Positions 12,331 through 55,525 of a DNA stretch of 64,000 nucleotides are shown piece after piece. The notes below the pieces were generated by a model that saw only the letters and a list, made by a program, of their open reading frames with translations, was not told the origin of the DNA and did no database searches. Every line of letters starts with the position of its first letter. Position 1 is the first letter of the stretch. Both the position numbers and the translations under genes were made by a program. Origin of the DNA: Mytilus edulis. Its lineage: Eukaryota. Location: contig NC_092354.1 of the NCBI RefSeq assembly GCF_963676685.1, positions 17,980,001-18,044,000 on the forward strand, in the 5' to 3' direction.

Positions 12331-15300
12331 ATGACAGAAATAACAGACACAATTTCAGTTCTGACTTTCGTCAGGTTGTTCTTAGTATTCCAAGTAAGTC
12401 TTAAATTATCAGTTACTATCTAATATTGATGTGATAGTTGATTGGTTGGTAGATTGTGGTTAATAAAAAGATAACGATGTGGTATGACTTGGGGCAGGAA
12501 CATGCAGGATGTGGCGGGGTTAAAAATAGTTTGAAGGCGCCTCCCCCTAAACCAGTGGTGTGACAATATAACATTAGAACACACTACGGAAATAAGTTTA
12601 AAAATTCTTAACTCATCAGTTGATATAAATAGTAAAACATCTAACAAAAACATAGAGTACACGTGGCACGGTACTCATACATCCCTACAACAAACAGACA
12701 CGAATTAGAGATATGATAATACTCGCAGTTACTGGTAGCTAGTTTATAGAATAATTAAATAGTTTCTGAAAGGTAGATCAATCGATAAAATGAACGGTAA
12801 ATTCAGACTGTCATTTGACTAGACTTGTGTATGGATGGCTGATTTACCGTACAGCGGCAAATGTATACGCATATTCAGGAAGATAACATGCTAGTACGAT
12901 ATGAATATGGACCCCACTTTGTACAAGACCGACACATGAAGTCTAAATTTTACTATATTGAATATGAATGCACATTTGTACCCATATGGGTTGAAGGCAT
13001 ACATAAATCAACATAATAATTTTACAGTACATCATACAGAAAAAAACAACAAAAGAACAAAACATTATATACATATATGTATCTATCATGCAGTTGTTGA
13101 GTCCAACCTTTCAGTGCCCATGACTTTTAACAAATGAAGCAGCATACTGCATAATTGGCGGACAAGAAAGACACAAACCAATTTATCCAAATTATCCATG
13201 TTATCTATATCAGAATAGATATTTCTAACTTTCTGCAAAAATTCAAATCTCATATCTTTATATTTTGTACATGTAAATAAAAAATGCTCTTCATCATCTG
13301 TTTTATTTAGACAACAATGTTGACATAAACGTTCTTCCCTTTTTATATTTTTGTATCTACCCTTTCAATTTCCAAAATATGGTCACTCACCCTTAATTTA
13401 GTATTTTTTTTCCTTATTTCAAAGTTATTCTCTTTAAGTAAATAAGGCTCAGTTTCATATTTCGTTTTAAATTTACTATTATAATAGATAAATAATTTAT
13501 TATTTTCTGTTAAAGAATTTAATTTTTCAAAGAACAGCTTTTTACAGTTTTCTTGTAAAATCTCTTTCGTGTGTTTATCCATTTTATATTTTTCTTTTAT
13601 AAAGTCAATATTTTGTATATCAGATATATTTAAATGTGACTAGTTAACAAAGTAACAGTCCACATGAAGACACGTATTCCATTTGGTTAATAGCGGATAG
13701 TTGTCTTTTGTTTAATTCATACCACATCTTCTTATTTTCATCTACCTTGACTCATCATTCCTATACACCACGAGACCATCTTGGCGGTTGACTTTCAATT
13801 GGAAATGACGGTATGCTGGACATGTTGGATGTGGGCAACATTTCTCTATTCTGACGTGCATGTATTTCTACATCCGCACAACCGAACGACCTCACCTAGG
13901 CTATTATGTTTATACACCCCAGTCTATGCATCAGTAATAAATCTAAAGGTTTTTTTTAACTTATCAATCAAATATACATAGTGTGATATGTTTATAATTC
14001 TGTAAAATTCATTAGTTTAGAATTTTAAGTATTACTTTTTGTTTTTGTAAGAAATATCTTTTATACATGTATGTATCAACATAAAAAAAATATTGACCTT
14101 GTGATACACTTTCAGTGCTAAAATATCTGTATAGAGATAATTAGTATAGATTTACTGACTACAAAATCAATATGTATATGTATAAACATATCGGTACTCA
14201 TATATATACATTTGATACTCATTTAAAATGATGTATACCAGTTTGAATGTTTTATTATTTGCAGATGTTAATATCAGATGCATACTTTTACAACTTTAAA
14301 TGTCCTTCGGAAGCCAGTTGGAAATTTCGGGCGGAAGTAGAGTGCAACAGTACCTCGAACTACTTTTGCTTATACAATAACGTAGACTTGAAGTATGTTG
14401 AGGGTTGTAATGGACCAGACTGGGATAGAAAAGGTACATTTTCAATAGCGAATACGAATATTACCTAATATTTTAAAGAAGAAGTTTTGGGGTCGCTTTA
14501 ATGTTTATGTGTATCTTGGAACACTATATTTTACGGGAAATTAATCTGATTGTCAATATATAATGTTCCTAGGTGTATCGAATTTGTAAAGACGATAAAA
14601 CAAGCAAATATTTTTCGACGCTTGTAAAAAAAAAGAAGTTAACAACTATAGGTGACCATCCTTCTTTCAACAATGAAGAAAATCCATACCGCGTAGTTCG
14701 TTTTTCCCCATTGGAATCTTTATGGGGAACATGCATTTCGTTATTTTGTTTTAAAAGAAGCTGCTTTGCTGTTAATAAATACGAACCCATACGTCAATCA
14801 TCATTACGTGCCGACCTGCTCTATTATTTTCCATTTGATTTTCATGAACTTGTTAAATGTCACTTTCAAGATACATATAAATGATGCAGCAACTCCATTA
14901 CATCACACAACTATAAGAACTAGTCTACATGCAACTACACTAGACTGCTACCGATGGATTATATCTGTCTATAATTCAGCGGTTCGATGTGTGATTTAAC
15001 TTGACAGTAACAATGAGGTATGGCGTCAACATTGAATTATCCGAACAGCAAAATATGGTATGAATATGATGTAAGACAACCTTTGACAAGGTTTCTTACT
15101 AGAACGAACACTTACATATATAGACTAGTAGAGGGTATGGATGGGTACTTCATATCTGTATTAATGTCTAGCTCATTATTCTTTATTTAAAAAAGGGGGT
15201 TACTGTATTTAACTGATAACGGTTACTTGACATTGTTCTTTTCTGTAATCAATATATTTTACCTAACCATAGACGAATCCGGGGGAGCCCCCACCCCCTT

Positions 15301-18300
15301 TCCCTTTTGTGGGAAAAATGGTTGTTTAATAGGGAAACACCGAAGCATGGCTGGAGCGCCCCCTTTTTTATAAAAAAAATTCCAGATCCGCCACTGATAG
15401 ATCATTAATATTTGCAGTTATGCAGTTATTCTTAAAAAAAAATATACATTGTATTTGAATACCCCCGTATACTATATTCTTTATTATGTTTGATCCACTC
15501 TTTGTCCTGTAAACCCTATCTACACATCCAAGGTATACTATCATGCGGCGAAGTTAAATTCTAATTGTCCATATAAACAGTTTTTTTTTTTATTAAACTA
15601 AATTATAATAACTATGAAGATAGGAATTTGTTTAATTCGTTGTCCTTTTTGTGTTACAGGAAGTAAGCGGATTTATGTTGGAGACTTTAGCAGAGGAAAA
15701 TGTAAGTCTGACCGTTTCCAGCCATTTAAATTCTTTACTAATGAAAGCATGACCGACTGTTACTATGCTAAATCAAACTGCAGTGAAGAAGGACAAATTC
15801 TGCAAGAAAAAAGTTCATCAAAGGAAGATAGAAGATGTCGATGTAATCATGAAAAGAATTATGCATTTATTAAAACTCCAAGAAATGTATGCTTTTGTAT
15901 TCCAACAGAAGAAGACTGTTCCTGTTATATTAAATCATGTCCAGTAAACCAAACACTGGCAGCAGGTATTTAACTTTTAATTTGTTTATAAGAAGAAACA
16001 TTTAATTTGACACAAGATATACAATGGTTTCGAAAAGCATGTAGAAAATATTGATAATGTGAAATTATGCAATGGTAAAATTAAATGAAACGCTATAAAA
16101 AAATAAAGTTTAAAGATCAAAAGATCAAAAGATAGCTTACAGTCTATAGTAACAATACCTAATTATGGCTTACTACATATATTTTGAACAGGTTAAATAC
16201 TACCTTGCGATATAAAGAACGATTCAATTTCGTCTTTTATCATGAAAAAAGTTGACTAAGTTTCACAGATGTAGTTTTGAAGATTCTTTAAGTAGTATTA
16301 GCAAATCAATTTAAAAACATTTAGTTTATAAAAAAATCTATATCATATCCTGTTGTTACGATTTTATAATTCCCAAATAAAATCATGTATTCAATTTGAA
16401 TTAAATGTTATATATATAATAGCGCCTGGTTAATCGTGTGTGTTAAATTGGTAGATTTAATTGGATATCACTTCGCCGTAGAGGTTGAATTTTATACGTG
16501 ACGTAATTTCTTGTCATATAAAATTGAGAATGGAAAAGGGGAATATGTCAAAGCGACACCAACCCAACCATAGGTCAGTCAACAGCCGATGGCCACCAAT
16601 GGGTCTTCAATGTTGCTAGAAACTCCTGCACCCGGAGGCATCCCTCAGTTGGACCCAAACCAAATATCTTTACTACTTCAGTGATAATGGACGTCATACT
16701 AAACTCCAAATTATACAAGAGACACTAAAATTCATACAAGACTTACAAAGGCCAGAGGCTTGGGACAGGCGCAAAATTGCGACGAGGTTAAACATGTTTT
16801 TGAGATGTCAACCCTCCCATTATACCTCTAGCCAATGTAGAAAAACAAACGCACAACCATACGCACAGTAAAACTCGGTTAAAGAGAAGTCCGAGTCTGA
16901 TGTCAGCATGAAACATTTTTTTTTTATATCAAAATGACAATAATACATAAATAACAACAGACTTCTAGCAGTTACTGACATGTCAGCTGCAGACCTCAAT
17001 TAATCTGATTGAAAGATCATGTCTTCATCATATGAATATCAGAAACTACTGGGCCATATTTAACCAAACTTAGCCACAATCATCCTTGGGGTATCTAGTT
17101 TAAAAAATGTGTCCGGTGACCTGGCCATCCAACCAAGATGGCCGTCATGGCTAAAAATAGAACATAGGGGTAAAATGTATATTTTGGCTTATATCTTTGA
17201 AACCAAAACGTTTAGAGCAAATCTGATAGAATAAAATTGTTGATCAGGTTAAGATCTATCTGCCCTGAAATTTTCAGACGAATCAGGCAACCTGTTGTTG
17301 TGTTGCTGCCCCTGAATTAGTTATTTTCAGAATATTTAGCAGCTTTTGGTTGATTGTTGTTTACTTAACGTCCAGTGACAAATATATCATGCATGTGTTC
17401 AGGACGAGAACAACTTAACAAAAAAATCAATAGGTATGTCCTGTAATATTGAGGCCATTCGGGATGAAAGACGGGGAATGAGTACTGCCGCTGGAAAATG
17501 AGGGTAAATAGGATAGGAACAGAACTTTCGCATTGCAACCTACGGACCCTTTAAAGAGTTGCTGCAATTTTTCTAATGATGAAATGAGCATTGCATGGTC
17601 AACATGAGGCACTGCTGACCGGACGTGGCTGCGCATTTAAACATCCAGCACAATCAAACGAACGTCCTACTTTTTTTCAAATATTAAACGGCCGGTCGAA
17701 AGAAGCCAACTTGTGACTTAACTTCTATTTCCCAGTCGCCCTTTGAAAAATAATTCTTACATGTCATACCTTGTCTTTACCTATATGTTGTTCACTTGAA
17801 ACCAATTTTTTGGTTTCTAAATCACCTGAATAAAATTGCCGATCCTCTGGGGTTTCAATGAACTAAACATTTTATATATATATATGTCAAGTCGTTGGTA
17901 CAAATTTGACTGAATGAAATGTGTTTTACGGGTGCTTGACGTATTCTTGAATGCAATGTTTCCTTTAATTTCAGATTATATTTGCACTCACAATGAGAAC
18001 CTGGGAAAATCAAAATGTAAAGATATACACAAGTAAGATTATTTCCTAAATACATGCAGTTTACTTAACTCAAAGCAGTGTAATGAACTTTCATATTTCA
18101 ATAAACTTAGTTGTCACTAGACTTTAGGCAAGCGTTTTTTTTGTTATCATTTTAGTGATATACTCAAGTTATTTTATTTGTAAGAAAATTCACGATCAAA
18201 GATACCACTTAATGTTAAGAACTTGCACAGTTGACTATCTTAACCTCATTGACTAGATAAACTGAATAAAATTTAAACAAAAAAATTGTAAGGGTTCCGC

Positions 18301-21300
18301 GGAAACCAGTGTCTCTCCTACTTTTGCTCTAAATCGCAGGCTCAACAAAAATGAGGGAAAAAATAAATAAAAATATTCCGCTTGATACTATCTTTTGATT
18401 GTGAAAGAAGCTTCTGTCCAAGTTTGGAAAAAATCCAGGATGAATCTAATAAATGTTTTAAAAACTTTAACTATATGGATATACAATGTAATGTTAATTT
18501 GAAGACAAACTAAGTCCATTTATTATAAGTAAAATACAGATACACAGGTACAAAATATTCACAAAATTTCCTTGAAGATACTAGATTTTGATCATAAACA
18601 AGCTTCTGTCCAAGTTTGATATAGTATAAGAAAGTTATCATAATTTAAAAAAAATTAACCATAGTGCGAGTGTGTTGTTTCATGGCAGAAAATCTAAGTC
18701 CATTTAAAGTAAAATACGGAAAAAAAATCTCGTTTTACAAAATTTACTTCTGGATACTATTTAATGATCATAAACAAGCTTCTGCCCAAGTTTGGTACAA
18801 ACCAAGGATTGTTTAAGAAAGTTATTAAAATTTTAAAATGTATAACCACAGAGTGAATGTTATGTTTTCAGGCAGAAAAACTTAGTCCATTTATAGGTAA
18901 AATACGGAAAAAATGGAATTTTCTTTTTACAAAATTTACTTCTGGATACTATCTAATGATCATAAACAAGCTTCTGTCCAAGTTTGGTAGAGATCAAGGA
19001 TAGGTTAAGAAAGTAATTAAAATTTTAAAAAACTTTAACCACAGAGTGATTGTAATGTTTTCCTGCAGAAAAACTAAGTCCATTTATAATTAAAATACGG
19101 AAAAAATGGAATTTTATTTTCACAAAATTTACTTCTGGATACTATCTTATGATCATAAACAAGCTTCTGTCCAAGTTAAGACTTAAGTCGAAGGCTCGAC
19201 AAAAATGAGTTGCCTTCTATGGTATTGGGGGGAAAGTTTGTCGTTATACATATACGAACTTCTCGGAACGTCAACCATAGCAATTTTTTCAACGGTTTCA
19301 TACATTGTTCAATCGACATCTTGATAGAATATTAGATTGTTCCTAGGCAACAATACCACTTAACGCCAAACAGTTCAGAAGACAAAATAAGTTCTGCAAG
19401 CCTAACAGTAAGTGATGCATATTCAAATAAGTGATGTAATGTGCAAATATTGACGTTAGATTCCAATGTCGTTATTGTTAATATATATATAATTGTAGAT
19501 ATTACGTAACCTTGAATGAAACAACAGAAGTCAGAATGGGGAAGAATAGCACGTGGTTAAATAAATCAAGTAAGATCTTAGAGTAGTTAACTCAATCTTT
19601 AGAATGCGCAAAAACGTTCAGACTTTATATATTAACTTTAGGATAGCCGATTAAGTGTTTCGTATCCTTCTAAATATATATTTATCATATACTTCATGCC
19701 TAATACAATGCTTTTTGCATATGTGTAACGACCGGAAGAAAACAAGCTGTATTTGCACACCCGGTCTGATAACCCCGTATCAGCGCAATGACGTTTCGAC
19801 CCGGGAAGAAAATCCATACCAGCTTACGGTGTTAATCTTCTTTATTTTCGAAAGTATATGATAAAGAGATTAATAAATGGCCTTTTCCATATTGGCCCGC
19901 GTATCATCCATCGACCCATATCAGAACCTCGACTACGTCTCGGGATGATACCCGGGCTGATATGGAAAAGGCCATGTATTAATCTCTATATATAATCCAA
20001 CGAACTTGCATAGAAAGTACATAATGCTACAGATATTGTTTTCAAACATAAGATCCGCAGTCAAAGGATTAAATGGAATTCCCAAAGTGAGCAAAGATAT
20101 GACCCGAAATTAAACATAATCTTCTAACGTAGTACACTATTTCATTTAATCTCAGAATATGAGGGTCGTATTTTACATAATAAGTTTTCTGTATATGATT
20201 TCTTAAATGTGACATGCATTTGTTATATGTTTATATTTACACGATACCAAAGTGAACATATACAATATATCTATAAGTTTGCCTATTCAAGAGTGAGGGG
20301 TTTGGTAAGTATAATTTTATGACATCTTTGTCGACATATATAAGCGTTTAGAAGTTGCTGGCTCTCTGATTATCAAAAGATATCGCCATTCATTCATTAG
20401 TTCTGCTATTTTTCACCTGTTTGGTATTAGCATAGACGAAAAACATGTGTTGTTGCTTTATTTTTAATAAACAGTAGCAACTTTCTATAATAACTTTTTT
20501 TTCAGCTTCCAAACAGAGGGACAAGTTTATTGTTTTTATCATATGTTGTATAATTAGTAAGTATATAAGGTAGTATAGTGTAGTAAAGTATTTATTATTT
20601 CCATTATAAATTTAAAAATTGTTAATGTTCCTAAAATACAGAACAGGCTTACATATATACCCTTTTAATCCTCAATGTTTTTTCGTTTTGTCCCCTCGTA
20701 ACGCGTTGCGGGGGACATTGAAAAAACGGGTTTGTCGGTCCGTCCGTCTGTCCAGTCTTTTTAGCACTCAATACTAACAGGTACAATTCTTGACACCAGC
20801 ACTTCAACTATGTCTGAATATATCGTGCATGCGGAATATGCATTGTTTAATTTCTTATCAATTTTGGGTCATGCAATCCAAGGTAATGAAATAAATTCAA
20901 GTAAAAAAACACATAGTAGGAAAGAATTTTGATGACAGAACATGGACTCAAAATGCAAAAATAAATAAATAGGGAAACCATCGACATCGTTGTTTGAATT
21001 CACGTCGCTTGACATAATGTTTAACGGCAAACTATTATATTAAAAGTAGCTGTTATTTGTACAAAACTAAGCGAACCTCCAAAAAAGGTTGATCAATTCA
21101 GAAGTCAATGCTACGGTTCTTACATTAGTTTAACAACTTATCTTCACCTATTTAGGTATAACACATCATTAGCTTTTTAACACTGATTTGGTTCGAGCAT
21201 TTCTTATGGTCCTGTTTCGTGTAAATTAAGAATAGCATTTCGCATGCACGAAATTATATATGTATCAAGTGTTACTTTCAATTAATTTCCAATATTTAAA

Positions 21301-30300: not shown

Positions 30301-33300
30301 ATTGTATGAATTGAGGGGTTGTACCAATAGTAATGACTGTAAATGTATGCTCAAAATATGTAGTAAATCAGTTGTTCCGAGGAAAGATTTCAAACTTGAT
30401 TCATGTGATTTGTCATTGGTCGTGTCACTGATTCTTTATATACCAAAAATATTGAAATATTTTCTTTGCATTTACGGTTTTCGCAACTTCTTGGTGAATT
30501 ATCAACATACAATTTACCATTATATGGAGAACAAGAGATGTTGTAAATGTAAAGAACAGCTAACTGGAAAATTAATACTAAAAGAAAAGGAATGGAATAA
30601 GATTTTTATTAGAGATAACAATAAATCTTGCCAGAACAGTAATAAGAACTGTTGTTGCCGTTATAAACCAATAGATGGAATCGAATGCTCAAACGTGAAA
30701 GCGACGTTGTTGTCAAAAATTGTATATGCGGCAGGCCCTATAAGTGTTCTTACAAAAATTGGACAAGAAACGTTCTTATACTTTATAAATTGGACAATTG
30801 ATGATGTAAAATTATCTGGGGCGTTAAAAGAACTATTAAGAATGATAAAACCAGATGAAACATTTTCTCGTGACATTTTACATCGGATAACATCCAGTAA
30901 CTTCACTCAACTAGATAAAACTTTGACACAACATATTAATCCGCATAGATGGATTTCAAGACACTTGCAACATCAACAGGTATGTCTTTTACTGTAATTA
31001 ATCTCCTAAAGCATTAAGAATGGAAACGGGAATGATGTCAAAGAAACCTCAATCCGATCTAATAGAATAAAACATCCCATGGCCACTAATGGGTCTTCAT
31101 CACAGCGGGAAAATCCCGAAAACAGAGGCGGGCTTTAGCTGGCATCTTTTACAAAAGTGTGATAAGAGAATGACTTCCATGTTAAAGGCCTCAAAGAGAC
31201 CTATAGTTGTTAATTTCTGTGTCATTTTGGTCTCTTGTGGAGAGTTGTCTCATTTGCAATCATAACACATCTTCTTTTTTATATAAACATAGGACATATG
31301 GTCAATACATACAAATGTCTTCTTTGAGATAACCACTGATTAGAATGAAATCATGCAGGGCATGGATATTCCTTATGCGAAGTTTAACCAATGTTATTAC
31401 TTTCACCATCCAAGATGGCAGCCAGCTGGAGACTTCGTTTTACAAAGGACTCTATAGACAATACTAACACATTTTTTCTTTTAGAGAACCCCTAAACGGA
31501 ATGAAATCAACATGGTATGAATGTTCCTGATTGGATGCTGACCAAGAGTTACTGTGTTGAAGCCCATCAACAATCGTAGGGGGCTTATAGCCGAGGACTT
31601 CGTTTAACATAGGACAAAATGAGCAATACATACAGATGTCTTCTTTGAGAAACCACAGACTGGAATGAAACCAAATATGGCATGAATGTTCCTAATGAGG
31701 TGTTGACCAATTGTTGTTACTTTGTAGCTGATTGATCATCAAAGATTGCCGTAAGCGGGGATTTACTTTAACACTGGACCATATAGAAAATACATACAAA
31801 TTTCTTCTTTTAGAGATAAGCTTAATGGAATGAAATCAAACATGGCATACATATCCCATGAGGTGCTGATCAAGTGTTGTAACTTTGTCGGCCATCCATC
31901 GTCCAACATGGCCGCCAGTTTAGACTTACATGTAGTTTACCATATGACCCTATGAGAAATGCATACAAAAATGCATACAACTGTTTTCTTTTAGGTAACC
32001 ACTGAATTGAATGAAACCAAACACGGCTTGAATATTCCTAATGAGGTGCTGGTCATGTGTTGTTTCTTTGTAGCCAATTAAACATCAAAGACGGCTGCCA
32101 GAGGAAACTTAAGTAATGAAAAACCCCTATGTGAAATACTTAAAAAAGTTTTCTTTTGAAGAACCACTGGATGGAATTAAACCAAACATGACATAAATGT
32201 TCCTTATCAGGTGCTCATCCGATCCACTAACAAAGATGGTTGTCAATGGGGAACTTTATTAAACAAAAGATACTTAGGGAAATGTATTACTTTTGAGGTG
32301 CTTACCATGTGTTGTTACTTTGTAGCTGATTTGTCATTACCAATATGAAGTAATTTTCTACAATTTCAATGAATTTGTGAGTGATTTCTGTACTTACAAA
32401 AATCTTCTGCGTTTGATTAATGTACGATGCTAAAATAAATATTAAATCTAATTTGGCCTCGATGATTATAAGTATATCAGTTATGATTTTAATCTCTTTT
32501 TTAACATGAATTCAAAAAAAGTAGAATCAGGTGAGCGACACATGCTCTTGAGAGCCAGTAGTTGAATTTAACCTAAATGGACAGTTTTCATTTTTTTTAC
32601 CCTGGTATCTATAATGACTTAATTTTTACAGTATTCGCACGGCATTTAGTTCATAGATTTTGAAAACATGTCTTTTTAATTTTTGTTCTCAGGCCACAAC
32701 TGGAAAATCTCTTCAAATTCTTCTACTCGATAAAGGTATGTAATGTTCATTAATAAATGATAATAGAAATACAAATTCAAAAAAAAAAGTTGTGATGTTT
32801 CACTACTGTCGCGGTTTAGCAGGGGAATGTTTTGAAATATCAGATTGTGTATGTGCATATTCTGAAATAGAAGACGGTTTTTCAGTATTTTTTTAGGGAA
32901 AGATTGCATGAAATGCAATCAAAACAATATGTTACTGCCTTGATATCTATTCCTTTCAAGGCTTATCACTACCTTTTTTACACACAAAATATAGTGCATT
33001 GATCGTAACAGTCTATACTTCCGATCCATGAACATTTCCAGAAATTAATCAATGAAATACATTATATATATGCTCAGATATTCAAGTCACAAAACGATGT
33101 TACGCCTGTCAAGAAAATTGCATGACTTTTGCAAGGTGCAGGAATATAATATCTGTTTTTAAAAAATAAACGGTGTCATTGCTAAAGTCATTTTTAAAGT
33201 ATGAAGATACATCTGTATCTCCCATTCTCCAGTATTGTAATTAAATCAACCACAACACATGCTTTATTGACAATTCAATATTCAATTTTACTTCCCACTG

Positions 33301-36300
33301 ATAAATTTACGCAGACTTTAAAAATAAAATTGAGAAAGGGAATGGTGAATATGTCAAAGCGACAACCACCCGACCATAGAGCAGACAACAGCCGAAGGCA
33401 ACCAATGGGTCTTCAATGTAGCGAGAATTCCTGCACCCGTAGGTGTCCTTCAGCTGGCCCCATAAAATATGCATAATAGCACAGTGATAATGGACGTCAT
33501 ACTAAACTCCGAATTATACACAAGAAACTAAAATTTAAAATCATACAAGACTAACAAAGCCCAGAGGCTTCTGACTTGGTACAGGCGCAAAATTACGGCG
33601 GGGTTAAACATGTTTATGAGATCTCAACCCTCCCCCTATACCTCTAGCCAATGTAGAAAAGTAAAAGAATAACAATACGTACATTAAAATTCAGTTCAAG
33701 AGAAGTCCGAGTCCGATGTCAAAAGATGTAACAAAAGAAAATAAATAAAATGACAATAATACATAAATAACAACAGATTACTAGCAGTTAACTGACATGC
33801 CAGCTCCAGACATCAATTAAACTGATTGAAAGATTATGTCTTCATCATATGAATATCAGGTACAATCCCTCCCGTTAGGGGTTTATTTACCCTTTTGTGC
33901 TCACAATAACTTTAAGTGTATTATTTGTTGCTATATATCATATTTGTTTTTGTATCTAGTAATGTGTCCATAAAGCAAGCCGTTGGTTTCCTCTTTTGAA
34001 TTGATCTATATTTATATTTTCATGGCCTTTCTAAAGCACAGTTACATATTGTGCTTAATAGTTATCAAAGGTACCAGGGTTATAATTTAGTACGCCAGAC
34101 TCGCGTTTCGTCTACATAAAACTCATCAGTAAATCTCATATCGAAATATTTAAGCCAAACAAGTTCAAATTTGAAGAGCATTGAGGGTCCAAAATTTTCA
34201 AAAAGTTGTGCCAAATACGGAAATACAGTCTGGGATAGTGAAAATCCTTTGTTTTTCGAAAGAAAAAAACATTTTTTTTTTTAAAATTTGTGAAAATTAC
34301 CATATTATTGACATTCATGTCAACACCGAAATGTTGACTACTGGCTGGTACGAAACAAAACGTCCACCAGCAGTTGCATCTACCAAGTAGTGTAAATAGT
34401 TATCAAAGGTACCTTAAAGTTGATGTTGTATAATGATCTTTAAATTATTAAGCAGGATCTGTTTCCGCTTCCGAATCACCCAATTTTTTAGTGTGGTTCG
34501 TATTGGTAAATCTTTTGTTTTCTGTGTTGTGTTTTGTGTACTGGTGTTTATCTTAACGTCGGGTTTTCAGGTTTTTTTTTTTTATTTTGCCATGGCATCG
34601 TCAGTAAGTTCCAGACAGATGAGTTTGGATATCTTCTGCCTCTGTTTATTCCTACGTCATTTTGTCATTATTGGCGTGTTGTCTTTAGAAATTTAAAAAC
34701 ACATCCTGTTATTTTTAAATGAACCTCGTTACATTCTCGATATGCGTTTTCAAGTTCTTGACTTCGTTTTTGTTCTGTTATACATGTTCCTTCAATATGA
34801 AATGAAGGATTTTTCTTCGAACTATTGTTGCAGTCTACATAAATGAAGATATTTGTTTTTGTAAGGGTGAACATTTACCGGATTTGTAATCACATAAGCA
34901 ACACGACGGGTGCCACATGTGGATCTGCCTACCCTTCCGGAGCACCTGAGATCACCCCCAGTTTTTGGTGGGGTTCGTGTTGTTTATTCTTTAGTTTTCT
35001 CTGTTGTGTCATGTGTACTGTTGTTTTTCTGTTTGTCTTTTTCAATTTTAGCCATGGCGTTGTCAGTTTGTTTTAGATTTATGAGTTTGACTGTCCCTTT
35101 GGTATCTTTCGTCCCACTTTTTTTAAACGTATTTTCACGTCTTAACTTAAGAAAGTTAAAACGAAATAAGTTACACAGTTTGCTACAAAAATTTTACGAT
35201 ATACATAGGGTTAGTAATTTCTTACGGTGTAAAAGAAAAAAGCTCGAACCCCATATGAAATTTACTGACCTTATATGTATCGTAGTATGTCAATAGCACA
35301 TTATGTTACCGTCTGTGACAATATGTGGCATTTGGACTAGTGGCATATCTAGCGATCAAGTTTTCAATATGAATAATTTCCCATGGTTTGTGTACAACAA
35401 ATGTCATCATTTACAATTTATTAGCTTTTAATGCATTTATTCCAATCGTCCAGTATCAACGTCTTCGTGTTTTGTCATTGTGAAACGTTTCAAATTTTTC
35501 TAAACGTCTTGTTCATGTTGTTGTTTATTTGAAGTAATAGGTAGTTGTGCAATTTTGCCGCATTTTCATGAAATTTTAGAAGCAGTTTGAGTATATAGAA
35601 CTGTAAATTGATAACGATGAAAATAGATATTAAGTAAGTTTTATACTTTTATATATATAATATACAGCCCTGACAATGTTCTGTAAAAACTCACAAGAAG
35701 TACAAATATATCAAATGCACGTAAATATTCCTTAAAATTGACATGATACTGCCACTAAAATGTCTGTTTTGTATGAAAGTAATAGGGGTTTCGAATTCGT
35801 ATTTGTTATAAATTACTCAACGGTTTCTCTGTGATATATTAAAACGTATAAAAATAGAAATTCTTACCAAGACGTCACGATCATTTTTGCCTTTTTTAAG
35901 TGCTTTTCCACGCTGTACAGAAGATTCAATTTTCATTCTAAAAAGATTATATCGGCGACCCCCTATAAATTTAATATCAATAAAAAGGACAGTTAGGTGA
36001 CTAAACGTCACTTTTATATAGAACATTCTTAGAACAGGCTTACAAAAAATATTAATTTTGAGACAAAATCCCTGTACTTATCTACTATATTCACATGTAT
36101 TTACTACATTTATTCTACTATTTTCCGGAAATTATATTTGTTATATCTCAAAAGTTCACAAAGTTCCATTATTTGAGATAATAATATAATGTGTAATATA
36201 CAATTCAATTTGGGAAGATGCAATCATATCTTAACTTATTAAATGAGTGCCCTTTAGGTTGTAGTGGATTTTTTTTTATTACAAATTAAAGCATTTTCTG

Positions 36301-39300
36301 TCTAAAATCTAATTGATAATGTCTTACATATCCTAAATCATTTAGGTAGTTGTGAATGAAACCTAGTATTTTGTGTGACATCTGTGCACATGATTTATTG
36401 AAACCTGTAAATATATTTACTAATTTTAGTTTTGAAATGACAGAACATATCTAATTCATATAACTAATGTTTAAAACATGTTTTTTTTAGGATTTAATCA
36501 ATACAAATCAATGTTTCCTTTGGTTAATTTGTTTTTATTGGCAAAATCTAACATGTGAATATACAGAATAAAAAAACATTTATTTGAAATTTTTCGTTTA
36601 GATGATTTGCATGTTAAAAGTGTACAGATCCCTAAAGATTTCCCTTTACCTCATAGAACGTAAGTAATAACTACAACCTTTGTTTTGAGAAAGTATTCAC
36701 CACAGGCATGCTATTGGTTGAAAGCGCAGTGTTGTTTATCAATTATTCTGAATAGAGTAAAACAAAATCATTTTGGCTCTATCGTTCTTCATTGGCAATA
36801 CATGAACACATTTAAAGTTAAAACTTAAATTCCTTACAGATAAAAACTGTATACTAATGCATCTCTCATTAAAAACACGTTATACCTCTTTTTTGGATCC
36901 TTTTATTGACTGCTTATTTATGTTCATACATTGTTGTACACCTTGCCAAATTACCTTTTTACCTTTGTATCCGTCGTTGTTCGTTAACTTAAGCAAACAT
37001 CTTCTCCTCTGAAACTACTTAATAGAATTTAACCAAACTTGGTCACAATCATAATTAGTTATAAAGTACAAACAAATATGTGTCCGATGACCCTGTCTGT
37101 TAGTCAAGATGGCTGAGAAAAAATAGTACATAGTGCAAAATGCATGTTTTGTCTTTCATCTTGAAAACCTATGAAAGGGAAAAATCTGGCAGAGCAGATA
37201 TGGTGAGAACATGGTTATCTGCCTGCTGTCCTTGTTCGTCAGAACTGCCTTGTAGGAGTTATAGAATTTTCTTAAAATCTAAAGTTTTATAAATTCTAAT
37301 AATGAAAATTTAAAGATTTTTATCTTTTGTAGAAATTATATGACAGATCTTACTACCGACGAAAATAATTTCTTAGTTGTAGTTTACGTACTAAAACAAA
37401 TACTATGTCCTGTGATAAAAAATGAATTTACCACCCAATGCCCTAAGCATGTATTAGATGAAATCAGAGATCGTATATCTGAACTGCAAAAACCCAGAGA
37501 CTTGCGTAAAGTTGAAAGTAAAAGCGGAAAAGAAAAAATTTACCTGACGCAAGATCAACAAACACGATTAATTTCGCAAAAAGGTGAGTTTATTTACAAT
37601 TTTGATAGCTTACAATGAAAGTTTTATTTTGTTTTACATATCATTATCCATGTTTGTATCTTTGAATCTTGCGCCATACTTTGTATATACTGCACATTAA
37701 ATTTTGTTCTAAATCTTAAGAAATTAACTTAATATATGTTCTTTATTACAATGTTCAAACGAACATAATATATGTATGTGCTTAACTTGCTGTAATTTTC
37801 TTGTTCCATTCTGCACCTCATTTTGAGTAATAAAAAAACTATTATTGTATAAATTTATATAAATAAGACCAGACTATTTTTCAAACTACCAGACACGGTG
37901 CACTTTTCGATGAACAAAGAAAACAGGACGTGTAAATGTTATGAACCTAAATTCTTAGATAGAAATAGGAAGATGTGGTGTGAGTGCCAATGAGACAACT
38001 CTCCATCCAAATAACAATTTAAAAAGTAAACCATTAGAGACTTTTGCAAAAGCTTCCCAGAACAGTAGGGACTATCTTACCTATAAATGACTACGTTATT
38101 TCCATTTCTGTAACTTTATGTTTGCTCTTATAAACAAAAATAATGACATGCAATATATGAAAGACTATGTGTTTAGCTGTAATGTTGCATATTTGAAGTA
38201 AAACCCTGAAATTTCATAAATATAGACCTTTAAGGAAAGTGACAATATTTTTGAACGAACAGTCATAACTTAACTGGTGTGTGCAAAATGTTCCGTGGAT
38301 CCATGACATCCTTGGCATCAATATACTGTAACAAGTTTAATATTAAATCAAATTATTATTTTCTGAATTTATATTGCTATTAGTAAAATATAGAAATTGA
38401 CAATATTTGTTCGTCTATTTTTTAGAAGTGTAAGAAAACTTCGATGGTTGATTTTTGTCTTAAAATGTTTGCGGAGCGTTCTTTAGAACATTACTTGATT
38501 GATTGCCAAAGAACTAAATGGGAGCCCATGTGATTGTTTTGTCAATAAAAGCAATAAATCTTGATTTTTAATGGCTACATTGGAATAAATTTAGATTTTT
38601 CGTATGCGAGTTAATCATGATGAGTTACAGATTTAGTTTAAGTTGTGTATCGCTCCGCTAATTTTTACCGAAATTACGGGCTTTGGACTTTGATAAATTG
38701 TTGAAAATCACAGTTATACGGACTTTTTTTCTATACGCCTTCAGATTTTGAGTTGATTTTTTATATGCGAGACTACCATTATGTTTATGTCCACAGGTGT
38801 TATTCAAATTGCAGATATTCAACTGTTTGTGACGGGCCGTTCGTGTCGCTTTGACACATCTAGTTTTATTGGTCACGTCGACTTGAACTTATATATTTTG
38901 ATCTTACATCTTAACATGCTTGAAGCTTATATTTCATCATAGGGAACACGTCGAAAGTTCATTTTTATAATTACTTCTAATAATATAAATACCTGGTCAA
39001 AATTTCATTGACTAATTAATTGAAAGAGAAAACTTTCTATTGTGTAACATGTAATTACAAATCAATTTGAAACGCACTGAACATAGTTATAGCGTTAACA
39101 AATGTTTATTTTTATAGGAGAAGAATCGAAGAACTTAGATTTGGAGCTGATGGTTTACATTCTGAAACAAAGATCCAATTCTGAATGGAACAAAAACTAT
39201 ATCGAGCATTTGGACGAGATTGAAAAGATCAGAGGGGAGATTGTTCAAAGCAAAAGTGGAACTTTAGACCAAACAACGTTCGAAGATTTTATGGACCGCA

Positions 39301-39724
39301 TTTGTAAGGTACATGTATAACGAGACATCAAAACTATAGTTGATAGTAAACAAGTATAAATGTAAGGTCGCAAAAGTTTGATAATATTTAAAACCAGTGA
39401 ACTTTTGGTATATACTAACACCGAGAAAGAAACCAGTAAGGTCCAATGAAGCACAACGAAACAAGACCAAATGCATCATGTTATCTAAACAAGTTGAAAG
39501 AAAACGTTGTACGTTAATTTGCTGCATTTAGGTTATAAACAAACATCGAAAGCCTAGACATCGTTATGACGGACCCTTATTTTGAGCCGTTGGATATACG
39601 GCTGGTTAGAGAGAGAAAAAAAAACCAATATATTTAGGCTATGATTTTTTTCTACTCAGATGCTCAACGGTTGAAGAGAAGGATATTTTACCTTCATGGA
39701 ATTAAAAAAAATATGTACTATTGA
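12331..39724 (+). CDS. Multi-exon type I membrane protein: TNFR-like Cys-rich ectodomain, TM, acidic linker, two DZIP3-type HEPN-like domains flanking a duplicated Cys/His module
   Basis: 19 GT-AG exons join with matching phases and no stop (3204 nt, 1068 codons): 12331-12393, 14265-14433, 15660-15965, 17975-18032, 19499-19569, 20506-20556, 21378-21467, 21617-21745, 22033-22092, 22413-22511, 25241-25345, 27186-27413, 27857-28077, 29354-29423, 30039-30979, 32693-32735, 36602-36659, 37333-37583, 39118-39308. The terminal exon is uncertain; candidate 39638-39724 has AATAAA at about 39790. Confidence 0.8.
12960..13640 (-). mobile_element. 3' fragment of a non-LTR retrotransposon (RTE-X-like ORF2 C-terminus)
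   Basis: Minus-strand EPYL..KLRVSDHILEIE, then across a frameshift EERLCQHCCLNKTDDEEHFLFTCTKY, the CCHC-type tail of such LINEs. Confidence 0.7.
14265..14433 (+). CDS. Gene 2 exon: end of signal peptide and first Cys-rich ectodomain segment
   Basis: MLISDAYFYNFKCPSEASWKFRAEVECNSTSNYFCLYNNVDLKYVEGCNGPDWDRK; follows hydrophobic exon 12331-12393 (MTEITDTISVLTFVRLFLVFQ) in phase 0. Confidence 0.85.
15660..15965 (+). CDS. Gene 2 exon: TNFR-like cysteine-rich domain
   Basis: CKSDRFQPF..DCYYAKSNCSEEGQ..SSSKEDRRCRC..CFCIPTEEDCSCYIKSCP resembles TNFR CRD spacing (C..G....D..C.C); phase 1-1. Confidence 0.85.
16520..17040 (+). repeat. Interspersed repeat family B (aaaattgagaatggaaa.gggaat.tgtcaaag); copies also at 31015-31150, 33325-33885 and 61110-61430 (minus)
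   Basis: Long near-collinear match between 16520-17040 and 33325-33860. Confidence 0.85.
18275..19205. repeat. Tandem array of about five 180-190 bp units (aagcttctgtccaagtttgg), probably HINE-borne
   Basis: Unit marker at about 18408, 18600, 18776, 18968 and 19161. Confidence 0.85.
19861..19991. mobile_element. Palindromic MITE
   Basis: agagattaata.atggccttttccatat..gccc is mirrored by gggc..atatggaaaaggccat.tattaatctct. Confidence 0.85.
20506..21467 (+). CDS. Gene 2 transmembrane helix split across two exons (20506-20556, 21378-21467)
   Basis: Spliced peptide KFIVFIICCIIIICGFVVVVFLKWK: 21 hydrophobic residues followed by basic stop-transfer residues. Confidence 0.8.
22788..23537 (+). mobile_element. 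HINE/Helentron-type element, one-unit copy of the 62538-63830 family (fragments also at about 17043-17350, 37000-37260, 41930-42220)
   Basis: ctcacctggcccgaaggtgagc 5' end, shared body and gagcgacagagcctct 3' end. Confidence 0.85.
23767..23810 (-). ncRNA. Degenerate minimal type I hammerhead ribozyme in a retrozyme-like repeat
   Basis: Minus strand GCGTCA ttgacaga c ttttgaa GAC GAAA CGCGC GTC ttgcgc; GAAA, palindromic stem III and GUC retained, CUGAUGA box decayed. Confidence 0.5.
24658..24805. mobile_element. Near-perfect 148-bp palindromic MITE
   Basis: agacaataatagtgcat.gacttgacatatcaacgatataaggat is mirrored at the 3' end. Confidence 0.9.
25660..25706 (-). ncRNA. Degenerate minimal type I hammerhead ribozyme in a retrozyme-like repeat (about 25620-25790)
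   Basis: Minus strand CTGATGg GTC ttttgta GAC GAAA cactc GTC tagcgt; one substitution in the catalytic box. Confidence 0.6.
26551..26920. mobile_element. TIR MITE
   Basis: agagggtgtcca..aaaaacaggca and tgcctgatatt..tggacagcctct form imperfect inverted ends. Confidence 0.6.
27186..29423 (+). CDS. Gene 2 DZIP3-type HEPN-like domain 1 (three exons)
   Basis: YYLRIVHLLFRVVCPVVRMYF..PEQL..INNDQWKLLY / SEDFDLGLMIYLL..LYP..LTRIKYIRNNVIQS..SDENYHQFLDDLEE / AVLNL follows the DZIP3-HEPN pattern (QW..LY, FD..L...LL, L.RIK..RN). Confidence 0.75.
28534..28976. mobile_element. TIR MITE flanked by TATA
   Basis: TATA-GGTGTATTCCACCA ... TGGTGGTATTACACC-TATA. Confidence 0.75.
30039..30979 (+). CDS. Gene 2 large exon: two tandem Cys/His-rich modules
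   Basis: 941-nt exon; KHQLYH..KCCTC..LTEEQWEALY..C..C.C...C..P and QHTIYH..RCCKC..LKEKEWNKIF..C..CCCRYKP. Confidence 0.85.
31290..32563 (+). repeat. HINE-type element with about six or seven tandem 160-180 bp units
   Basis: Repeated ggaatgaaaccaaacatggc..tgaggtgctgacc..tgttgttactttgtagc; ends with aggtgagcgacac and hairpin gctcttgagagc. Confidence 0.8.
34057..34413 (-). mobile_element. Retrozyme-like 338-bp monomer with terminal direct repeat
   Basis: aatagttatcaaaggtacc at 34057-34075 and 34395-34413; contains a hammerhead core on the minus strand. Confidence 0.75.
34092..34137 (-). ncRNA. Minimal type I hammerhead ribozyme
   Basis: Minus strand ..a CTGATGA GTT ttatgta GAC GAAA C gcga G TC tggcgt: both catalytic boxes, stem II, short stem III and GUC site present; stem I weakened. 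Confidence 0.75.
34872..35122 (+). mobile_element. 3' tail copy of the Penelope-like element (older copy at about 34452-34660)
   Basis: Near-identical to 3368-3607 plus 3785-3798. Confidence 0.85.
37333..39308 (+). CDS. Gene 2 DZIP3-type HEPN-like domain 2 (two exons)
   Basis: LTTDENNFLVVVYVLKQILCPVIKNEF.. / SKNLDLELMVYILK..LDEIEKIRGEIVQSKSGTLDQTTFEDFMDRICK; same internal phase-1 and closing phase-0 introns as domain 1. Confidence 0.72.
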
Positions 39725-47200: not shown

Positions 47201-47325
47201 ATTGACATATTTTGAATTTTACTTAATATATTATTCACCAGCAATTTTAGAAAAATAATAAATACATATTTGAACAATACAACAAAGAATTTTTCAGCAC
47301 AGGATCGGGATATTGAAACTTGATA

Positions 47326-47659
47326 TGTACCATAGTTTGTTTGAAAAAGTGTGAGGGAATCGACACATACACCACAGTTCCATATCGACCCTCTGATTGG
47401 TTTACCAGAAGATTGAAAATGGTCATGTGGTGTATGTTAGATTCCTCACACTTTTAGCAAGAAACTACATTGTACCACATTTTCTTTCCTGTGATATCAG
47501 TTGAGAACTTTGACACATGTCATTTACCAAATAAAAAAGTGATTGGCTATATGTGCAGATACACCATAGGATGAACTAAATTTCAAAGCAAAGCTTTATC
47601 GTGAAATTTAGCCTCTCTTATGGTGTATCTACACATACCCAACACTTTTTAATTTGGTA
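47326..47659. repeat. Two adjacent palindromic MITE-like hairpins (47326-47476, 47525-47659)
   Basis: aaaagtgtgagggaatc..acatacaccaca mirrored by tgtggtgtatgt..gattcctcacactttt; taccaaataaaaaagtg..gatacaccata mirrored by tatggtgtatc..cactttttaatttggta. Confidence 0.75.
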
Positions 47660-55455: not shown

Positions 55456-55525
55456 TTCATAAAATTGTTTGTAGGAACTACTGCATGTTATTCTGTATCG
55501 AACTGTGTCTTTGCAATCTTTTTAC

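What the first reader, a model, noticed from the sequence alone, without database searches (positions are those of the whole stretch)
12331..39724. TNFR-like membrane receptor wired to tandem DZIP3-type HEPN domains
Seen: 19 exons splice into an uninterrupted 1068-codon frame running signal peptide, Cys-rich ectodomain, TM, acidic linker, HEPN-like 1, two Cys/His modules, HEPN-like 2. The ORF track shows only fragments of it. Established: HEPN domains are dimerisation-activated RNases in Cas13, RNase L and Ire1; TNFR-type ectodomains cluster on ligand binding and normally signal through death domains or TRAF motifs. Inference: this is a cell-surface receptor that couples ligand-driven clustering to a HEPN-fold output, an Ire1/RNase L-like logic without a kinase. 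Two HEPN domains in one chain could pair intramolecularly as in Cas13. I know of no characterised receptor with this architecture.
Basis: partly seen in the sequence, partly recalled or inferred. Interest (0 to 1): 0.85.

Follow-up and report, generated by a model that had tools for sequence, protein, structure and literature searches.

The report
Mussel membrane receptor with dead HEPN domains
This is a real blue-mussel gene, already listed in RefSeq as "uncharacterized", for a single-pass membrane protein. It joins a mussel-specific cysteine-rich outer domain to three HEPN-fold inner domains that have all lost the RNA-cutting histidine, so it more likely binds or scaffolds than cuts RNA.

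Summary
The gene is real. Eighteen GT-AG junctions rebuild a product identical at 1059 of 1059 compared residues to Mytilus edulis RefSeq isoform X2 (1060 aa). Isoform X1 adds a 33-aa cassette exon. Paralogues and RefSeq use 39954-40026.

The layout is confirmed:
- signal-like N-terminus
- ectodomain with 16 Cys
- transmembrane helix
- acidic linker
- HEPN1
- middle module
- HEPN2

Uninterrupted ORFs on roughly 3-kb public contigs show the same fusion in paralogues.

HEPN1 passes Pfam HEPN_DZIP3 (64.6 bits, cut-off 27). Both HEPN domains carry Gln at the catalytic His position, family-wide, while ten canonical copies in this genome all keep His. The middle module is probably a third, degenerate HEPN with two Cys/His repeats. 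HEPN1 and HEPN2 are predicted to pair through their Rx4Q motifs (0.80, best control 0.44).

"TNFR-like" is weakly supported: there is no sequence match, only TM 0.39-0.46 to TNFR models.

The ectodomain exon has at least 150 intact copies in this genome. Only five, in one 0.5-Mb cluster, sit upstream of this HEPN module; others precede nSTAND3-ankyrin exons.

A related oyster family was described by Kaur et al. 2021. I class this as a new variant of a known kind. No RNA reads could be reached.

The parts
12331..12393 (+). Exon 1: start codon and hydrophobic N-terminus (likely signal peptide, residues 1-21)
   Evidence: Matches P0057 residues 1-21. GT donor at 12394. Hydropathy peak at residues 7-25, KD 1.9. 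The signal-peptide role is inferred; no predictor was available.
14265..14433 (+). Exon 2: N-terminal part of the Cys-rich ectodomain (4 conserved Cys)
   Evidence: tblastn of paralogues, 57-69% identity. Junctions exact. C34, C48, C56 and C69 are near-invariant.
15660..15965 (+). Exon 3 (phase 1-1): core ectodomain module with 10 conserved Cys (RYQPF...EEGQ...CRCDY...EDCSCY...CP)
   Evidence: 100% identical to P0057 residues 78-179. At least 150 intact copies in the same genome, 204 candidates. Alignment A1.
17975..18032 (+). Exon 4: 'DYxC...C' membrane-proximal ectodomain piece
19499..19569 (+). Exon 5: stalk with N-glycosylation sequons
   Evidence: The ectodomain as a whole has 7 NxS/T sequons.
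20506..20556 (+). Exon 6: first half of the transmembrane helix
   Evidence: TM residues 230-248, KD 3.58.
21378..21467 (+). Exon 7: second half of the TM helix plus basic stop-transfer stretch (KWKNE...RRCFMRRK)
21617..22092 (+). Exons 8 (21617-21745) and 9 (22033-22092): acidic juxtamembrane linker
   Evidence: Linker residues 251-367 have 26 D/E against 17 K/R. No Pfam domain at E<=0.1.
22413..22511 (+). Cassette exon (33 aa) present only in RefSeq isoform X1 (P0067, 1093 aa)
   Evidence: 100% match to the X1-specific insert. AG/GT flanks, phase kept.
25241..25345 (+). Exon 10: acidic linker, similar to the cassette exon
27186..29423 (+). HEPN1: exons 11 (27186-27413), 12 (27857-28077) and 13 (29354-29423). 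The Rx4H site reads R-N-N-V-I-Q (Q497).
   Evidence: Exon-level Pfam hits are collinear: PF18738 profile positions 1-34 and 69-113. On the whole protein P0057, residues 405-524 score E 1.1e-17. Motif.
30039..30979 (+). Exon 14: middle module (residues 541-854). It holds two Cys/His repeats (H-x3-H-x6-7-CC-x-C...W...C...CxC) inside a helical domain that is probably a third, degenerate HEPN.
32693..36659 (+). Exons 15 (32693-32735) and 16 (36602-36659): short connector before HEPN2
37333..40026 (+). HEPN2: exons 17 (37333-37583), 18 (39118-39308) and 19 (39954-40026). The Rx4H site reads R-G-E-I-V-Q (Q1015).
   Evidence: Second Pfam stretch on P0057. The HEPN1 region of P0005 hits 39126-39302. 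Paralogue P0013 residues 756-862 match PF18738. Exon 19 is supported by P0005, P0016 and P0057.
41348..41352 (+). Probable last coding stub (AA + TGA), giving the RefSeq C-terminus ...NILE*
   Evidence: It is the only acceptor downstream in the window with a strong pyrimidine tract that yields E plus a stop. Without this splice the frame ends at 40049. Inferred.

Best explanation
The locus encodes a type I single-pass membrane protein of Mytilus edulis.

Layout (shown):
- Outside: a mussel-specific disulfide-rich ectodomain (16 Cys, 7 N-glycosylation sequons). It is the most conserved part of the family.
- Inside, after an acidic and alternatively spliced linker: three HEPN-fold units. These are HEPN1, a middle unit carrying two Cys/His repeats that probably bind zinc, and HEPN2.
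- All three units lack the catalytic His of the Rx4-6H RNase motif.
- The same ectodomain module is used at least 150 times in this genome. Elsewhere it sits upstream of other conflict-type cytoplasmic modules such as nSTAND3 NTPase plus ankyrin repeats.

Mechanism (inferred):
- HEPN1 and HEPN2 fold back on each other into a Cas13-like or Swt1-like pseudo-dimer, with their Rx4Q motifs facing each other.
- This assembly acts as a non-catalytic binding or scaffolding platform at the membrane. It could bind RNA, a nucleotide or another protein. It does not act as a ligand-gated RNase.
- The gene is one output variant of a modular, lineage-expanded family of probable innate-immune receptors.
For: Gene and fusion:
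- 18 GT-AG junctions with exact junction peptides, and 1059 of 1059 identity to RefSeq P0057.
- Paralogues with the same order in M. coruscus, M. galloprovincialis and M. trossulus.
- Logan contigs of 3152 and 3297 nt with uninterrupted ORFs of 974 and 982 aa carrying ectodomain, TM and HEPN.
- All 5 genomic copies of the middle module lie 10-30 kb downstream of an ectodomain exon, same strand, within C11 18.0-18.5 Mb.

Topology:
- TM KD 3.58, basic residues after the TM, and Cys plus sequons on the N-terminal side.

HEPN identity:
- Pfam PF18738 at 64.6 bits against a cut-off of 27, with 2 stretches.

Loss of the catalytic His:
- HEPN1 has Q in 15, R in 3, L in 1 and N in 1 family members. 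HEPN2 has Q in 17, L in 1 and Y in 1.
- Q1015 and S1016 are near-invariant.
- Ten aligned canonical copies in the same genome all have His.
- In a pearl oyster, 194 of 202 DZIP3-type HEPN proteins keep Rx4-6H (PMC9646362).
- Anantharaman et al. 2013 predict that motif-less HEPNs (MtlR, Swt1) bind RNA non-catalytically (PMC3710099).

Third HEPN:
-.

Pairing:
- Complex prediction score 0.80 against a best control of 0.44. The runs agree in at least 84% of contacts, and the partner's pLDDT is at least 79. This mark was reached by 51 of 78 solved complexes and 2 of 108 mismatched pairs.
- The interface includes residues 496-501 and 1010, 1013-1019, which are the two motifs.

Modularity:
- At least 150 intact ectodomain exons.
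- The same ectodomain at 51% identity (E 1e-47) on nSTAND3-ankyrin proteins P0065 and P0066.
- About 9 ectodomain exons on C8 lie 7-45 kb upstream, same strand, of nSTAND3-ankyrin exons.
- A mollusc nSTAND3+Ank cluster is among the Atlas structural neighbours.

Conservation:
- Ectodomain 64% mean identity among paralogues, against 43-46% for the HEPN units.
Against:
- The source libraries of the Logan contigs could not be checked. That they are mRNA is inferred from ORFs filling contigs far shorter than the 28-kb gene.
- Signal peptide, surface location and zinc binding are all inferred.
- Non-catalytic function is inferred from one missing residue. An alternative active site cannot be excluded, because the Gln-Ser is itself strongly conserved.
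- The complex test can pass from memory of known HEPN dimers. It does not distinguish intramolecular pairing from homodimers.
- No ligand is known.
- The immune role is by analogy only.
Confidence: 0.6

Rival explanations
1. One reading: a ligand-gated RNase. Ectodomain clustering brings the HEPN domains together and switches on RNA cleavage, following Ire1/RNase L logic without a kinase.
For: - The HEPN_DZIP3 fold is present twice or three times.
- HEPN RNases are activated by dimerisation (established knowledge; PMC3710099).
- The Arg of the motif is kept: R492 and R1010.
- The Gln-Ser that follows is strongly conserved, so the pocket is under selection.
Against: - The general acid/base His is absent from all three units, across the family down to a relative only about 23-28% identical.
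- All 10 aligned canonical copies in the same genome keep it.
- The middle unit's site is degenerate (K-I-G-Q-E-T-F-L-Y).
- HEPN1 and HEPN2 are predicted to pair within one chain, so receptor clustering would not be needed to form the dimer.
Confidence: 0.12
2. Inside-out reading. The fast-diverging cytoplasmic HEPN array is the sensing or target-binding part, for example for viral RNA or viral inhibitors. The conserved ectodomain is a constant module for anchoring, self-association or presenting the protein at a membrane, not a ligand-specific sensor.
For: - The ectodomain is the most conserved region among paralogues (64% against 43-46%).
- Kaur et al. call the ectodomain-TM part of the oyster family the 'constant region' and the C-terminal domains 'variable'.
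- The same ectodomain is attached to several different cytoplasmic modules.
Against: - Across the whole family of at least 150 copies, the ectodomain exon diverges to 36-50% identity, so it is not constant family-wide.
- There is no evidence for any intracellular ligand.
- This reading overlaps with the best explanation rather than excluding it.
Confidence: 0.18
3. Annotation artefact or decaying copy: two neighbouring genes merged by gene prediction, or a pseudogene of an expanded family.
For: - Some M. coruscus models in the family look chimeric or truncated. Examples are P0052 with a GMC oxidoreductase tail, P0007 and P0009 without a TM, and P0062, whose GTPase part was not found next to ectodomain exons in M. 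edulis.
- No reads for this gene were examined.
Against: - All 19 exons are open, with canonical splice sites.
- The same fusion sits in uninterrupted ORFs on short public contigs.
- There are 5 of 5 ectodomain/middle-module pairs in the genome.
- RefSeq lists seven protein accessions in two protein isoforms.
- Cys, His and motif residues are conserved.
Confidence: 0.05

Closest known systems
Crassostrea virginica lineage-specific expansion: Cys-rich ectodomain, TM, DED, NCOA6-type TRADD-N, then variable C-terminal effectors (Kaur, Iyer, Burroughs, Aravind 2021, eLife; PMC8195603)
   Same: - A bivalve-specific expansion of single-pass membrane proteins.
- A Cys-rich extracellular 'constant' part with swappable cytoplasmic conflict-type domains.
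- Those domains explicitly include HEPN RNases, STAND NTPases and ankyrins. These are the same output classes seen here.
   Different: - No DED or TRADD-N was detected between the TM and HEPN1 (Pfam at E<=0.1). The linker is only 117 acidic residues.
- This gene has three HEPN-fold units, all without the catalytic His.
- Whether the oyster and mussel ectodomains are homologous was not tested, because no oyster sequences were at hand.
- That paper does not mention Mytilus.
DZIP3/hRUL138-like HEPN family (Pfam PF18738; Anantharaman et al. 2013, PMC3710099)
   Same: - HEPN1 scores above the curated cut-off.
- The family is known for lineage-specific expansions in oysters and cnidarians and for fusions to immune domains.
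- This genome has at least 651 candidate copies.
   Different: [quoted passage not shown] A signal peptide, ectodomain and TM are not among them.
- His is replaced by Gln.
Ire1 and RNase L (KEN-type HEPN)
   Same: A sensor domain coupled to a HEPN-fold module. Ire1 is also a single-pass membrane protein (for KEN = HEPN).
   Different: - There is no kinase or pseudokinase.
- There is no Pfam KEN match.
- The catalytic residues are absent.
- The ectodomain is disulfide-rich and glycosylation-rich, which suggests the secretory surface rather than ER-lumen stress sensing.
Cas13 (two HEPN domains in one chain forming one composite site)
   Same: - Tandem HEPN domains in one polypeptide, predicted to pair through their motif helices.
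   Different: It is not RNA-guided, has no crRNA-binding lobes and no catalytic His, and shows no demonstrable homology beyond the HEPN fold.
Swt1 C-terminal HEPN dyad (yeast; PDB 4pqz)
   Same: - Swt1 HEPNs are a dyad predicted to be inactive and to bind RNA.
- A distant homologue of the middle module hits Pfam HEPN_Swt1.
   Different: - There is no PIN nuclease partner.
- The match is below the tool's own reliability range for helical bundles.
- Swt1 has no Cys/His inserts.
TNF receptor superfamily (TNFR_c6 cysteine-rich domains)
   Same: - Type I topology with an elongated Cys-rich ectodomain.
- Six TNFR_c6 clusters are the nearest named structural neighbours of a paralogue's ectodomain model (TM 0.39-0.46, 85-106 residues).
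   Different: - There is no TNFR_c6 Pfam hit and no PDB-sequence hit.
- There is no death domain or recognisable TRAF motif.
- TM below 0.5 usually means another fold.

Membership tests
HEPN_DZIP3 (PF18738) | Sequence match to the family profile above the curated gathering score | tested here: met
   P0057, identical to the window's product, scores 64.6 bits against a cut-off of 27, E 1.1e-17, with 2 stretches and a best stretch at 405-524. The exon-level hits are collinear.
HEPN_DZIP3 (PF18738) as an active RNase | Rx4-6H motif (catalytic Arg and His) | tested here: not met
   HEPN1 reads R-N-N-V-I-Q and HEPN2 reads R-G-E-I-V-Q. Across the family Gln holds this position in 15 of 20 (HEPN1) and 17 of 19 (HEPN2). 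His is invariant in 10 canonical copies of this genome.
HEPN fold (middle module as third HEPN) | Four-helix up-and-down bundle superposable on solved HEPN domains, or profile similarity to HEPN families | tested here: inconclusive
   [not shown]
TNF receptor superfamily | TNFR_c6 cysteine-rich repeats recognisable by sequence profile | tested here: not met
   No PF00020 hit on the exons, on P0057 or on 16 paralogues at E<=0.01 to 1. A profile of 30 ectodomain exons finds no TNFR chain in the PDB at E<=10.
TNF receptor superfamily | TNFR-type disulfide-ladder fold of the ectodomain | tested here: inconclusive
   AF2 of exon 3 failed (pLDDT 43.3). The Atlas model of P0005 residues 25-185 has six TNFR_c6 clusters as its nearest named neighbours, at TM 0.39-0.46.
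TNF receptor superfamily | Cytoplasmic death domain or TRAF-binding signalling tail | tested here: not met
   No Death-family Pfam hit on P0057. TRAF motifs were not searched for.
Oyster Cys-rich-ectodomain/TM/DED/TRADD-N receptors (Kaur et al. 2021) | Cys-rich extracellular region followed by one TM helix | tested here: met
   16 Cys and 7 sequons in residues 26-229. TM at 230-248, KD 3.58.
Oyster Cys-rich-ectodomain/TM/DED/TRADD-N receptors (Kaur et al. 2021) | Intracellular DED plus NCOA6-clade TRADD-N dyad after the TM | tested here: not met
   No DED or TRADD_N Pfam hit at E<=0.1 on P0057 or its paralogues. The TM-to-HEPN1 linker is 117 acidic residues. Only Pfam was used, so very divergent versions could be missed.
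Oyster Cys-rich-ectodomain/TM/DED/TRADD-N receptors (Kaur et al. 2021) | Homology of the ectodomain itself | not tested
Word-based searches from the mussel ectodomain returned only Mytilus proteins.
Ire1/RNase L | Kinase or pseudokinase domain directly preceding a KEN-type HEPN | tested here: not met
   No kinase or KEN Pfam hit on P0057.
Cas13-like tandem HEPN | Two HEPN domains of one chain forming one interface through their motif helices | tested here: met
   In silico only. Complex prediction scored 0.80 against a best control of 0.44, with contact agreement of at least 84% and partner pLDDT of at least 79. The interface covers 496-501 and 1010, 1013-1019.

The most novel reading that the evidence does not exclude
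In mussels the HEPN fold may have been turned into a signalling domain, used the way Death or TIR domains are used. In this reading, surface receptors with a catalytically dead triple-HEPN platform use the composite Rx4Q pocket and zinc modules in one of two ways. They either bind an RNA or nucleotide signal, or they dock active HEPN_DZIP3 proteins (at least 651 candidate copies in this genome, many on STAND/NLR-like proteins). That would link extracellular sensing to an intracellular RNase network.
Probability: 0.15. Interest if true: 0.8.

Novelty: new variant of a known kind. Interest (0 to 1): 0.45.

Why it matters
Bivalves have no adaptive immunity and carry very large, poorly understood expansions of conflict-type domains.

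This locus gives a clean, full-length example of a membrane receptor whose cytoplasmic output is a HEPN assembly that has lost its nuclease residue. It also shows that the same mussel-specific ectodomain (at least 150 copies) is attached to different outputs. That is a natural domain-swap series, useful for asking what the ectodomain recognises and what motif-less HEPN domains do in animals.

The finding extends the oyster receptor theme of Kaur et al. 2021 to Mytilus in a form without the DED/TRADD-N adaptor. It also points to a possible non-catalytic role for animal HEPN domains. It does not open a long-standing question by itself, and no function is shown.

Tried and rejected
The cytoplasmic domains behind the other ectodomain copies (at least 150) could only be approached by coordinates.
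- Ectodomain structure. AlphaFold2 on exon 3 with 30 paralogous exons gave pLDDT 43.3. The model was not used for fold search.
- Fold search of the middle-module model. Foldseek found nothing against PDB or BFVD at E<=0.001.
- PDB sequence searches. The ectodomain profile and whole P0057 gave nothing useful.
- ESM Atlas by features. It gave only unnamed mollusc clusters.
- Ectodomain search from P0062. It returned only 2 proteins.
- The ectodomain-dynamin-like GTPase fusion of M. coruscus P0062. It was not reproduced in M. edulis: its C-terminal part maps to C1 and C11, away from ectodomain exons, and its GTPase part gave no hit. I treat it as unconfirmed and possibly chimeric.
- A first beam-search exon refinement. 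It gave wrong boundaries and was replaced by the anchored junction test.
I could not reproduce it. An exon ending at 39724 in the only open frame adds at most 28 residues to the 1035 of exons 1-18.
- Joined sequence. Exons were joined only inside scripts, to test the frame and to compare with P0057. Whole-protein searches used the public record P0057 by id.

Full report
**What is in the window.**
The window is AT-rich (28-39% G+C) and has no N runs. ORF listing shows only fragments on the + strand between 12.3 and 40 kb. The largest is a 314-codon piece at 30053-30997. At exon level, Pfam gives two collinear sub-threshold HEPN_DZIP3 (PF18738) hits. One is at 27161-27433 (profile 1-34, E 0.047). 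The other is at 27895-28107 (profile 69-113, E 0.0017). Nothing else hits, and there is no TNFR hit.

**Homologues and the gene model.**
- An exhaustive HMMER search with the large exon found 43 cluster representatives. The long ones are 781-982 aa. They show a hydrophobic N-terminus, a Cys-rich region, a TM helix, HEPN_DZIP3, the large-exon module and a second HEPN.
- They are Mytilus coruscus and M. trossulus predictions, plus proteins from short Logan contigs. They map collinearly on the window.
- A search with a paralogue's ectodomain returned 26 proteins. Among them is P0057, M. edulis RefSeq 'uncharacterized protein isoform X2' (XP_071139634-36).
- Using P0057 as a guide, all 18 junctions are GT-AG with exact junction peptides. 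The exons joined in a script give an open frame identical to P0057 at 1059 of 1059 compared residues. The window is therefore M. edulis, chromosome-scale contig C11 at 17.98-18.04 Mb.
- The exons are: 12331-12393, 14265-14433, 15660-15965, 17975-18032, 19499-19569, 20506-20556, 21378-21467, 21617-21745, 22033-22092, 25241-25345, 27186-27413, 27857-28077, 29354-29423, 30039-30979, 32693-32735, 36602-36659, 37333-37583, 39118-39308 and 39954-40026.
- RefSeq ends ...NILE*. This needs one more stub, most likely 41348-41352. Without that splice the frame stops at 40049.
- Isoform X1 (P0067, 1093 aa) adds the cassette exon 22413-22511 in the linker.
Those used exons by reference or P0057 by id.

**Is the fusion real?**
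Four lines of indirect evidence are strong:
- RefSeq lists seven protein accessions in two protein isoforms.
- Logan contigs of 3152, 3297, 2716 and 2244 nt carry uninterrupted ORFs of 974, 982, 623 and 626 aa with the ectodomain and HEPN_DZIP3. TM segments were confirmed for the two longest. The genomic gene spans 28 kb in 19 or more exons, so these contigs are best read as spliced mRNA of paralogues.
- The large middle exon has only 5 copies in the genome, all on C11 between 18.01 and 18.52 Mb on the + strand. Each lies 10-30 kb downstream of an ectodomain exon on the same strand.
- The whole frame is intact.

**Ectodomain.**
- Residues 26-229 hold 16 Cys and 7 NxS/T sequons. The TM (230-248, KD 3.58) is followed by a basic stretch, which fits type I topology.
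- Exon 3 is a phase 1-1 exon with 10 conserved Cys. It has at least 150 intact copies in this genome out of 204 candidates, with no internal stops, spread over many chromosomes at 36-65% identity.
- No TNFR_c6 or other Pfam family matches. A profile of 30 copies finds no TNFR chain in the PDB.
- My AF2 model of exon 3 was unusable (pLDDT 43).
- The ESM Atlas model of paralogue P0005, cut to residues 25-185, has two unnamed mollusc clusters as neighbours (TM 0.92 and 0.87). After those come six clusters carrying TNFR_c6 (TM 0.39-0.46, 85-106 residues). A mollusc nSTAND3+ankyrin cluster also appears.
- 'TNFR-like' is thus a reasonable description of a possible fold, not a family assignment.

**HEPN domains.**
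- On P0057, PF18738 scores 64.6 bits against a cut-off of 27, with two stretches.
- HEPN2 is also tied to HEPN1 by a cross-hit and by Pfam hits in paralogues.
- The genome holds at least 651 candidate HEPN_DZIP3 regions. Ten canonical copies aligned here have an invariant His in R-N-x3-4-H.
- In this gene the sites read R-N-N-V-I-Q (Q497) and R-G-E-I-V-Q (Q1015).
- Across the receptor family, the His position of HEPN1 is Q in 15, R in 3, L in 1 and N in 1. In HEPN2 it is Q in 17, L in 1 and Y in 1. Q1015-S1016 is near-invariant even in a relative only about 23-28% identical.
- In a pearl oyster, 194 of 202 such domains keep the motif (PMC9646362).
- Anantharaman et al. predict that motif-less HEPNs are non-catalytic RNA binders (PMC3710099).

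**Middle module.**
- AF2 gives a confident model (pLDDT 84.9, pTM 0.86). It is mostly helical, with two small beta hairpins.
- It contains an internal repeat (E 8e-5) with near-invariant H595, H599, C607, C608, C610, C648 and H697, H701, C708, C711, C745, C747. These are probably zinc sites.
- Foldseek finds nothing.
- hhalign places the module's C-terminal helices on the catalytic helix of canonical HEPN_DZIP3 (E 3.4e-4, probability 38%).
- Distant sequence homologues of the module carry Pfam HEPN_DZIP3 (profile 77-124) or HEPN_Swt1 at the equivalent place.
- I read it as a third, degenerate HEPN with Cys/His inserts, with probability about 0.7. Its motif position is K-I-G-Q-E-T-F-L-Y here.

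**Pairing.**
- HEPN1 (368-545) and HEPN2 (888-1060) scored 0.80 against a best control of 0.44. The runs agree in at least 84% of contacts, and the partner's pLDDT is at least 79. The mark was reached by 51 of 78 solved complexes and 2 of 108 mismatched pairs.
- Both Rx4Q segments (496-501; 1010, 1013-1019) lie in the interface.
It cannot exclude memory of known HEPN dimers, or homodimers.

**Family context.**
- Among 18 family members the ectodomain is the most conserved part (64% mean identity). HEPN1, the middle module and HEPN2 are at 43-46%, and the stalk, TM and linker at 22-26%.
- The same ectodomain occurs on M. coruscus proteins with nSTAND3 NTPase plus ankyrin repeats (51% identity over 154 residues, E 1e-47).
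- In M. edulis, about nine ectodomain exons on C8 lie 7-45 kb upstream, same strand, of nSTAND3-ankyrin exons.
- An ectodomain-GTPase model (P0062) was not reproduced.
- The HEPN-coupled receptors are therefore a five-gene tandem subfamily of a much larger modular receptor family.

**Prior knowledge.**
- Anantharaman et al. [quoted passage not shown]
- Kaur et al. 2021 describe a C. virginica expansion of about 50 proteins. Each has a Cys-rich extracellular domain, a TM helix, DED and TRADD-N, and variable C-terminal domains including STAND NTPases, HEPN RNases, AIG GTPases and ankyrins. Mytilus is not mentioned there.
- Searches of the paper library found no description of the mussel family or of a HEPN receptor lacking the catalytic His.
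- The present gene lacks DED and TRADD-N by Pfam.
- Other notes of this scan list many HEPN fusions in the same genome.

**Verdict.**
The most likely mechanism is a membrane-anchored, non-catalytic triple-HEPN binding or scaffolding platform in a modular, probably immune, receptor family. It is a new variant of a kind already outlined for oysters.

Noticed in passing
window 49289-55455, minus strand: Three long ORFs (722, 851 and 454 aa) carry Pao/BEL retrotransposon peptidase (Peptidase_A17), an integrase zinc-binding domain and DUF5641. This is an LTR-retrotransposon pol region. It lies inside the 46119-57327 element that another note (s1-835504) reads as bounded by RSS-like heptamers. I observed it only, and checked nothing beyond Pfam.
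   Followed up: partly
window 5249-6331, + strand: A 360-codon ORF upstream of the gene has no Pfam match and no similarity to the receptor family. Its nature is unknown.
   Followed up: partly
window 16482-16868, 31010-31262 and 33198-33669 (introns 3, 14 and 15): Open stretches with clearly related translations recur in three introns (for example ...KRQPPDHRADNSRRQPMGLQC... and ...KRHQPNHRSVNSRWPPMGLQC...). They look like copies of one interspersed repeat.
   Followed up: no
window 18649-19205 (intron 4): Three tandem copies of a roughly 200-bp unit give near-identical translations (...AEKLSPF.KIRKKWNF.FTKFTSGYYLMIINKLLSKFG...).
   Followed up: no
window 34424-35293 (intron 15): Two adjacent, related, very hydrophobic open stretches of 90 and 132 codons look like a duplicated repeat, not an exon of this gene. 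No family protein matches there.
   Followed up: no
G000 C8:50.2-51.0 Mb (+) and C8:12.6-13.0 Mb (-): There are clusters in which copies of the ectodomain exon lie 7-45 kb upstream, same strand, of large nSTAND3-NTPase/ankyrin exons. This matches the M. coruscus proteins P0065 and P0066. A membrane-anchored STAND NTPase with an extracellular Cys-rich domain would be unusual and deserves its own look.
   Followed up: partly
G000 whole genome: There are at least 651 candidate HEPN_DZIP3 regions, of which 150 were scored and all passed the Pfam cut-off. Many have the same exon layout (profile positions about 37-115 in one exon).
   Followed up: partly
P0064 (M. coruscus, 636 aa): A divergent copy of the ectodomain (35% identity) with a TM at 223-241 is followed by an immunoglobulin domain (278-345) and then a HEPN_DZIP3 with Gln at the His position. 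An Ig domain on the cytoplasmic side would be odd. This may be a gene-model artefact.
   Followed up: no
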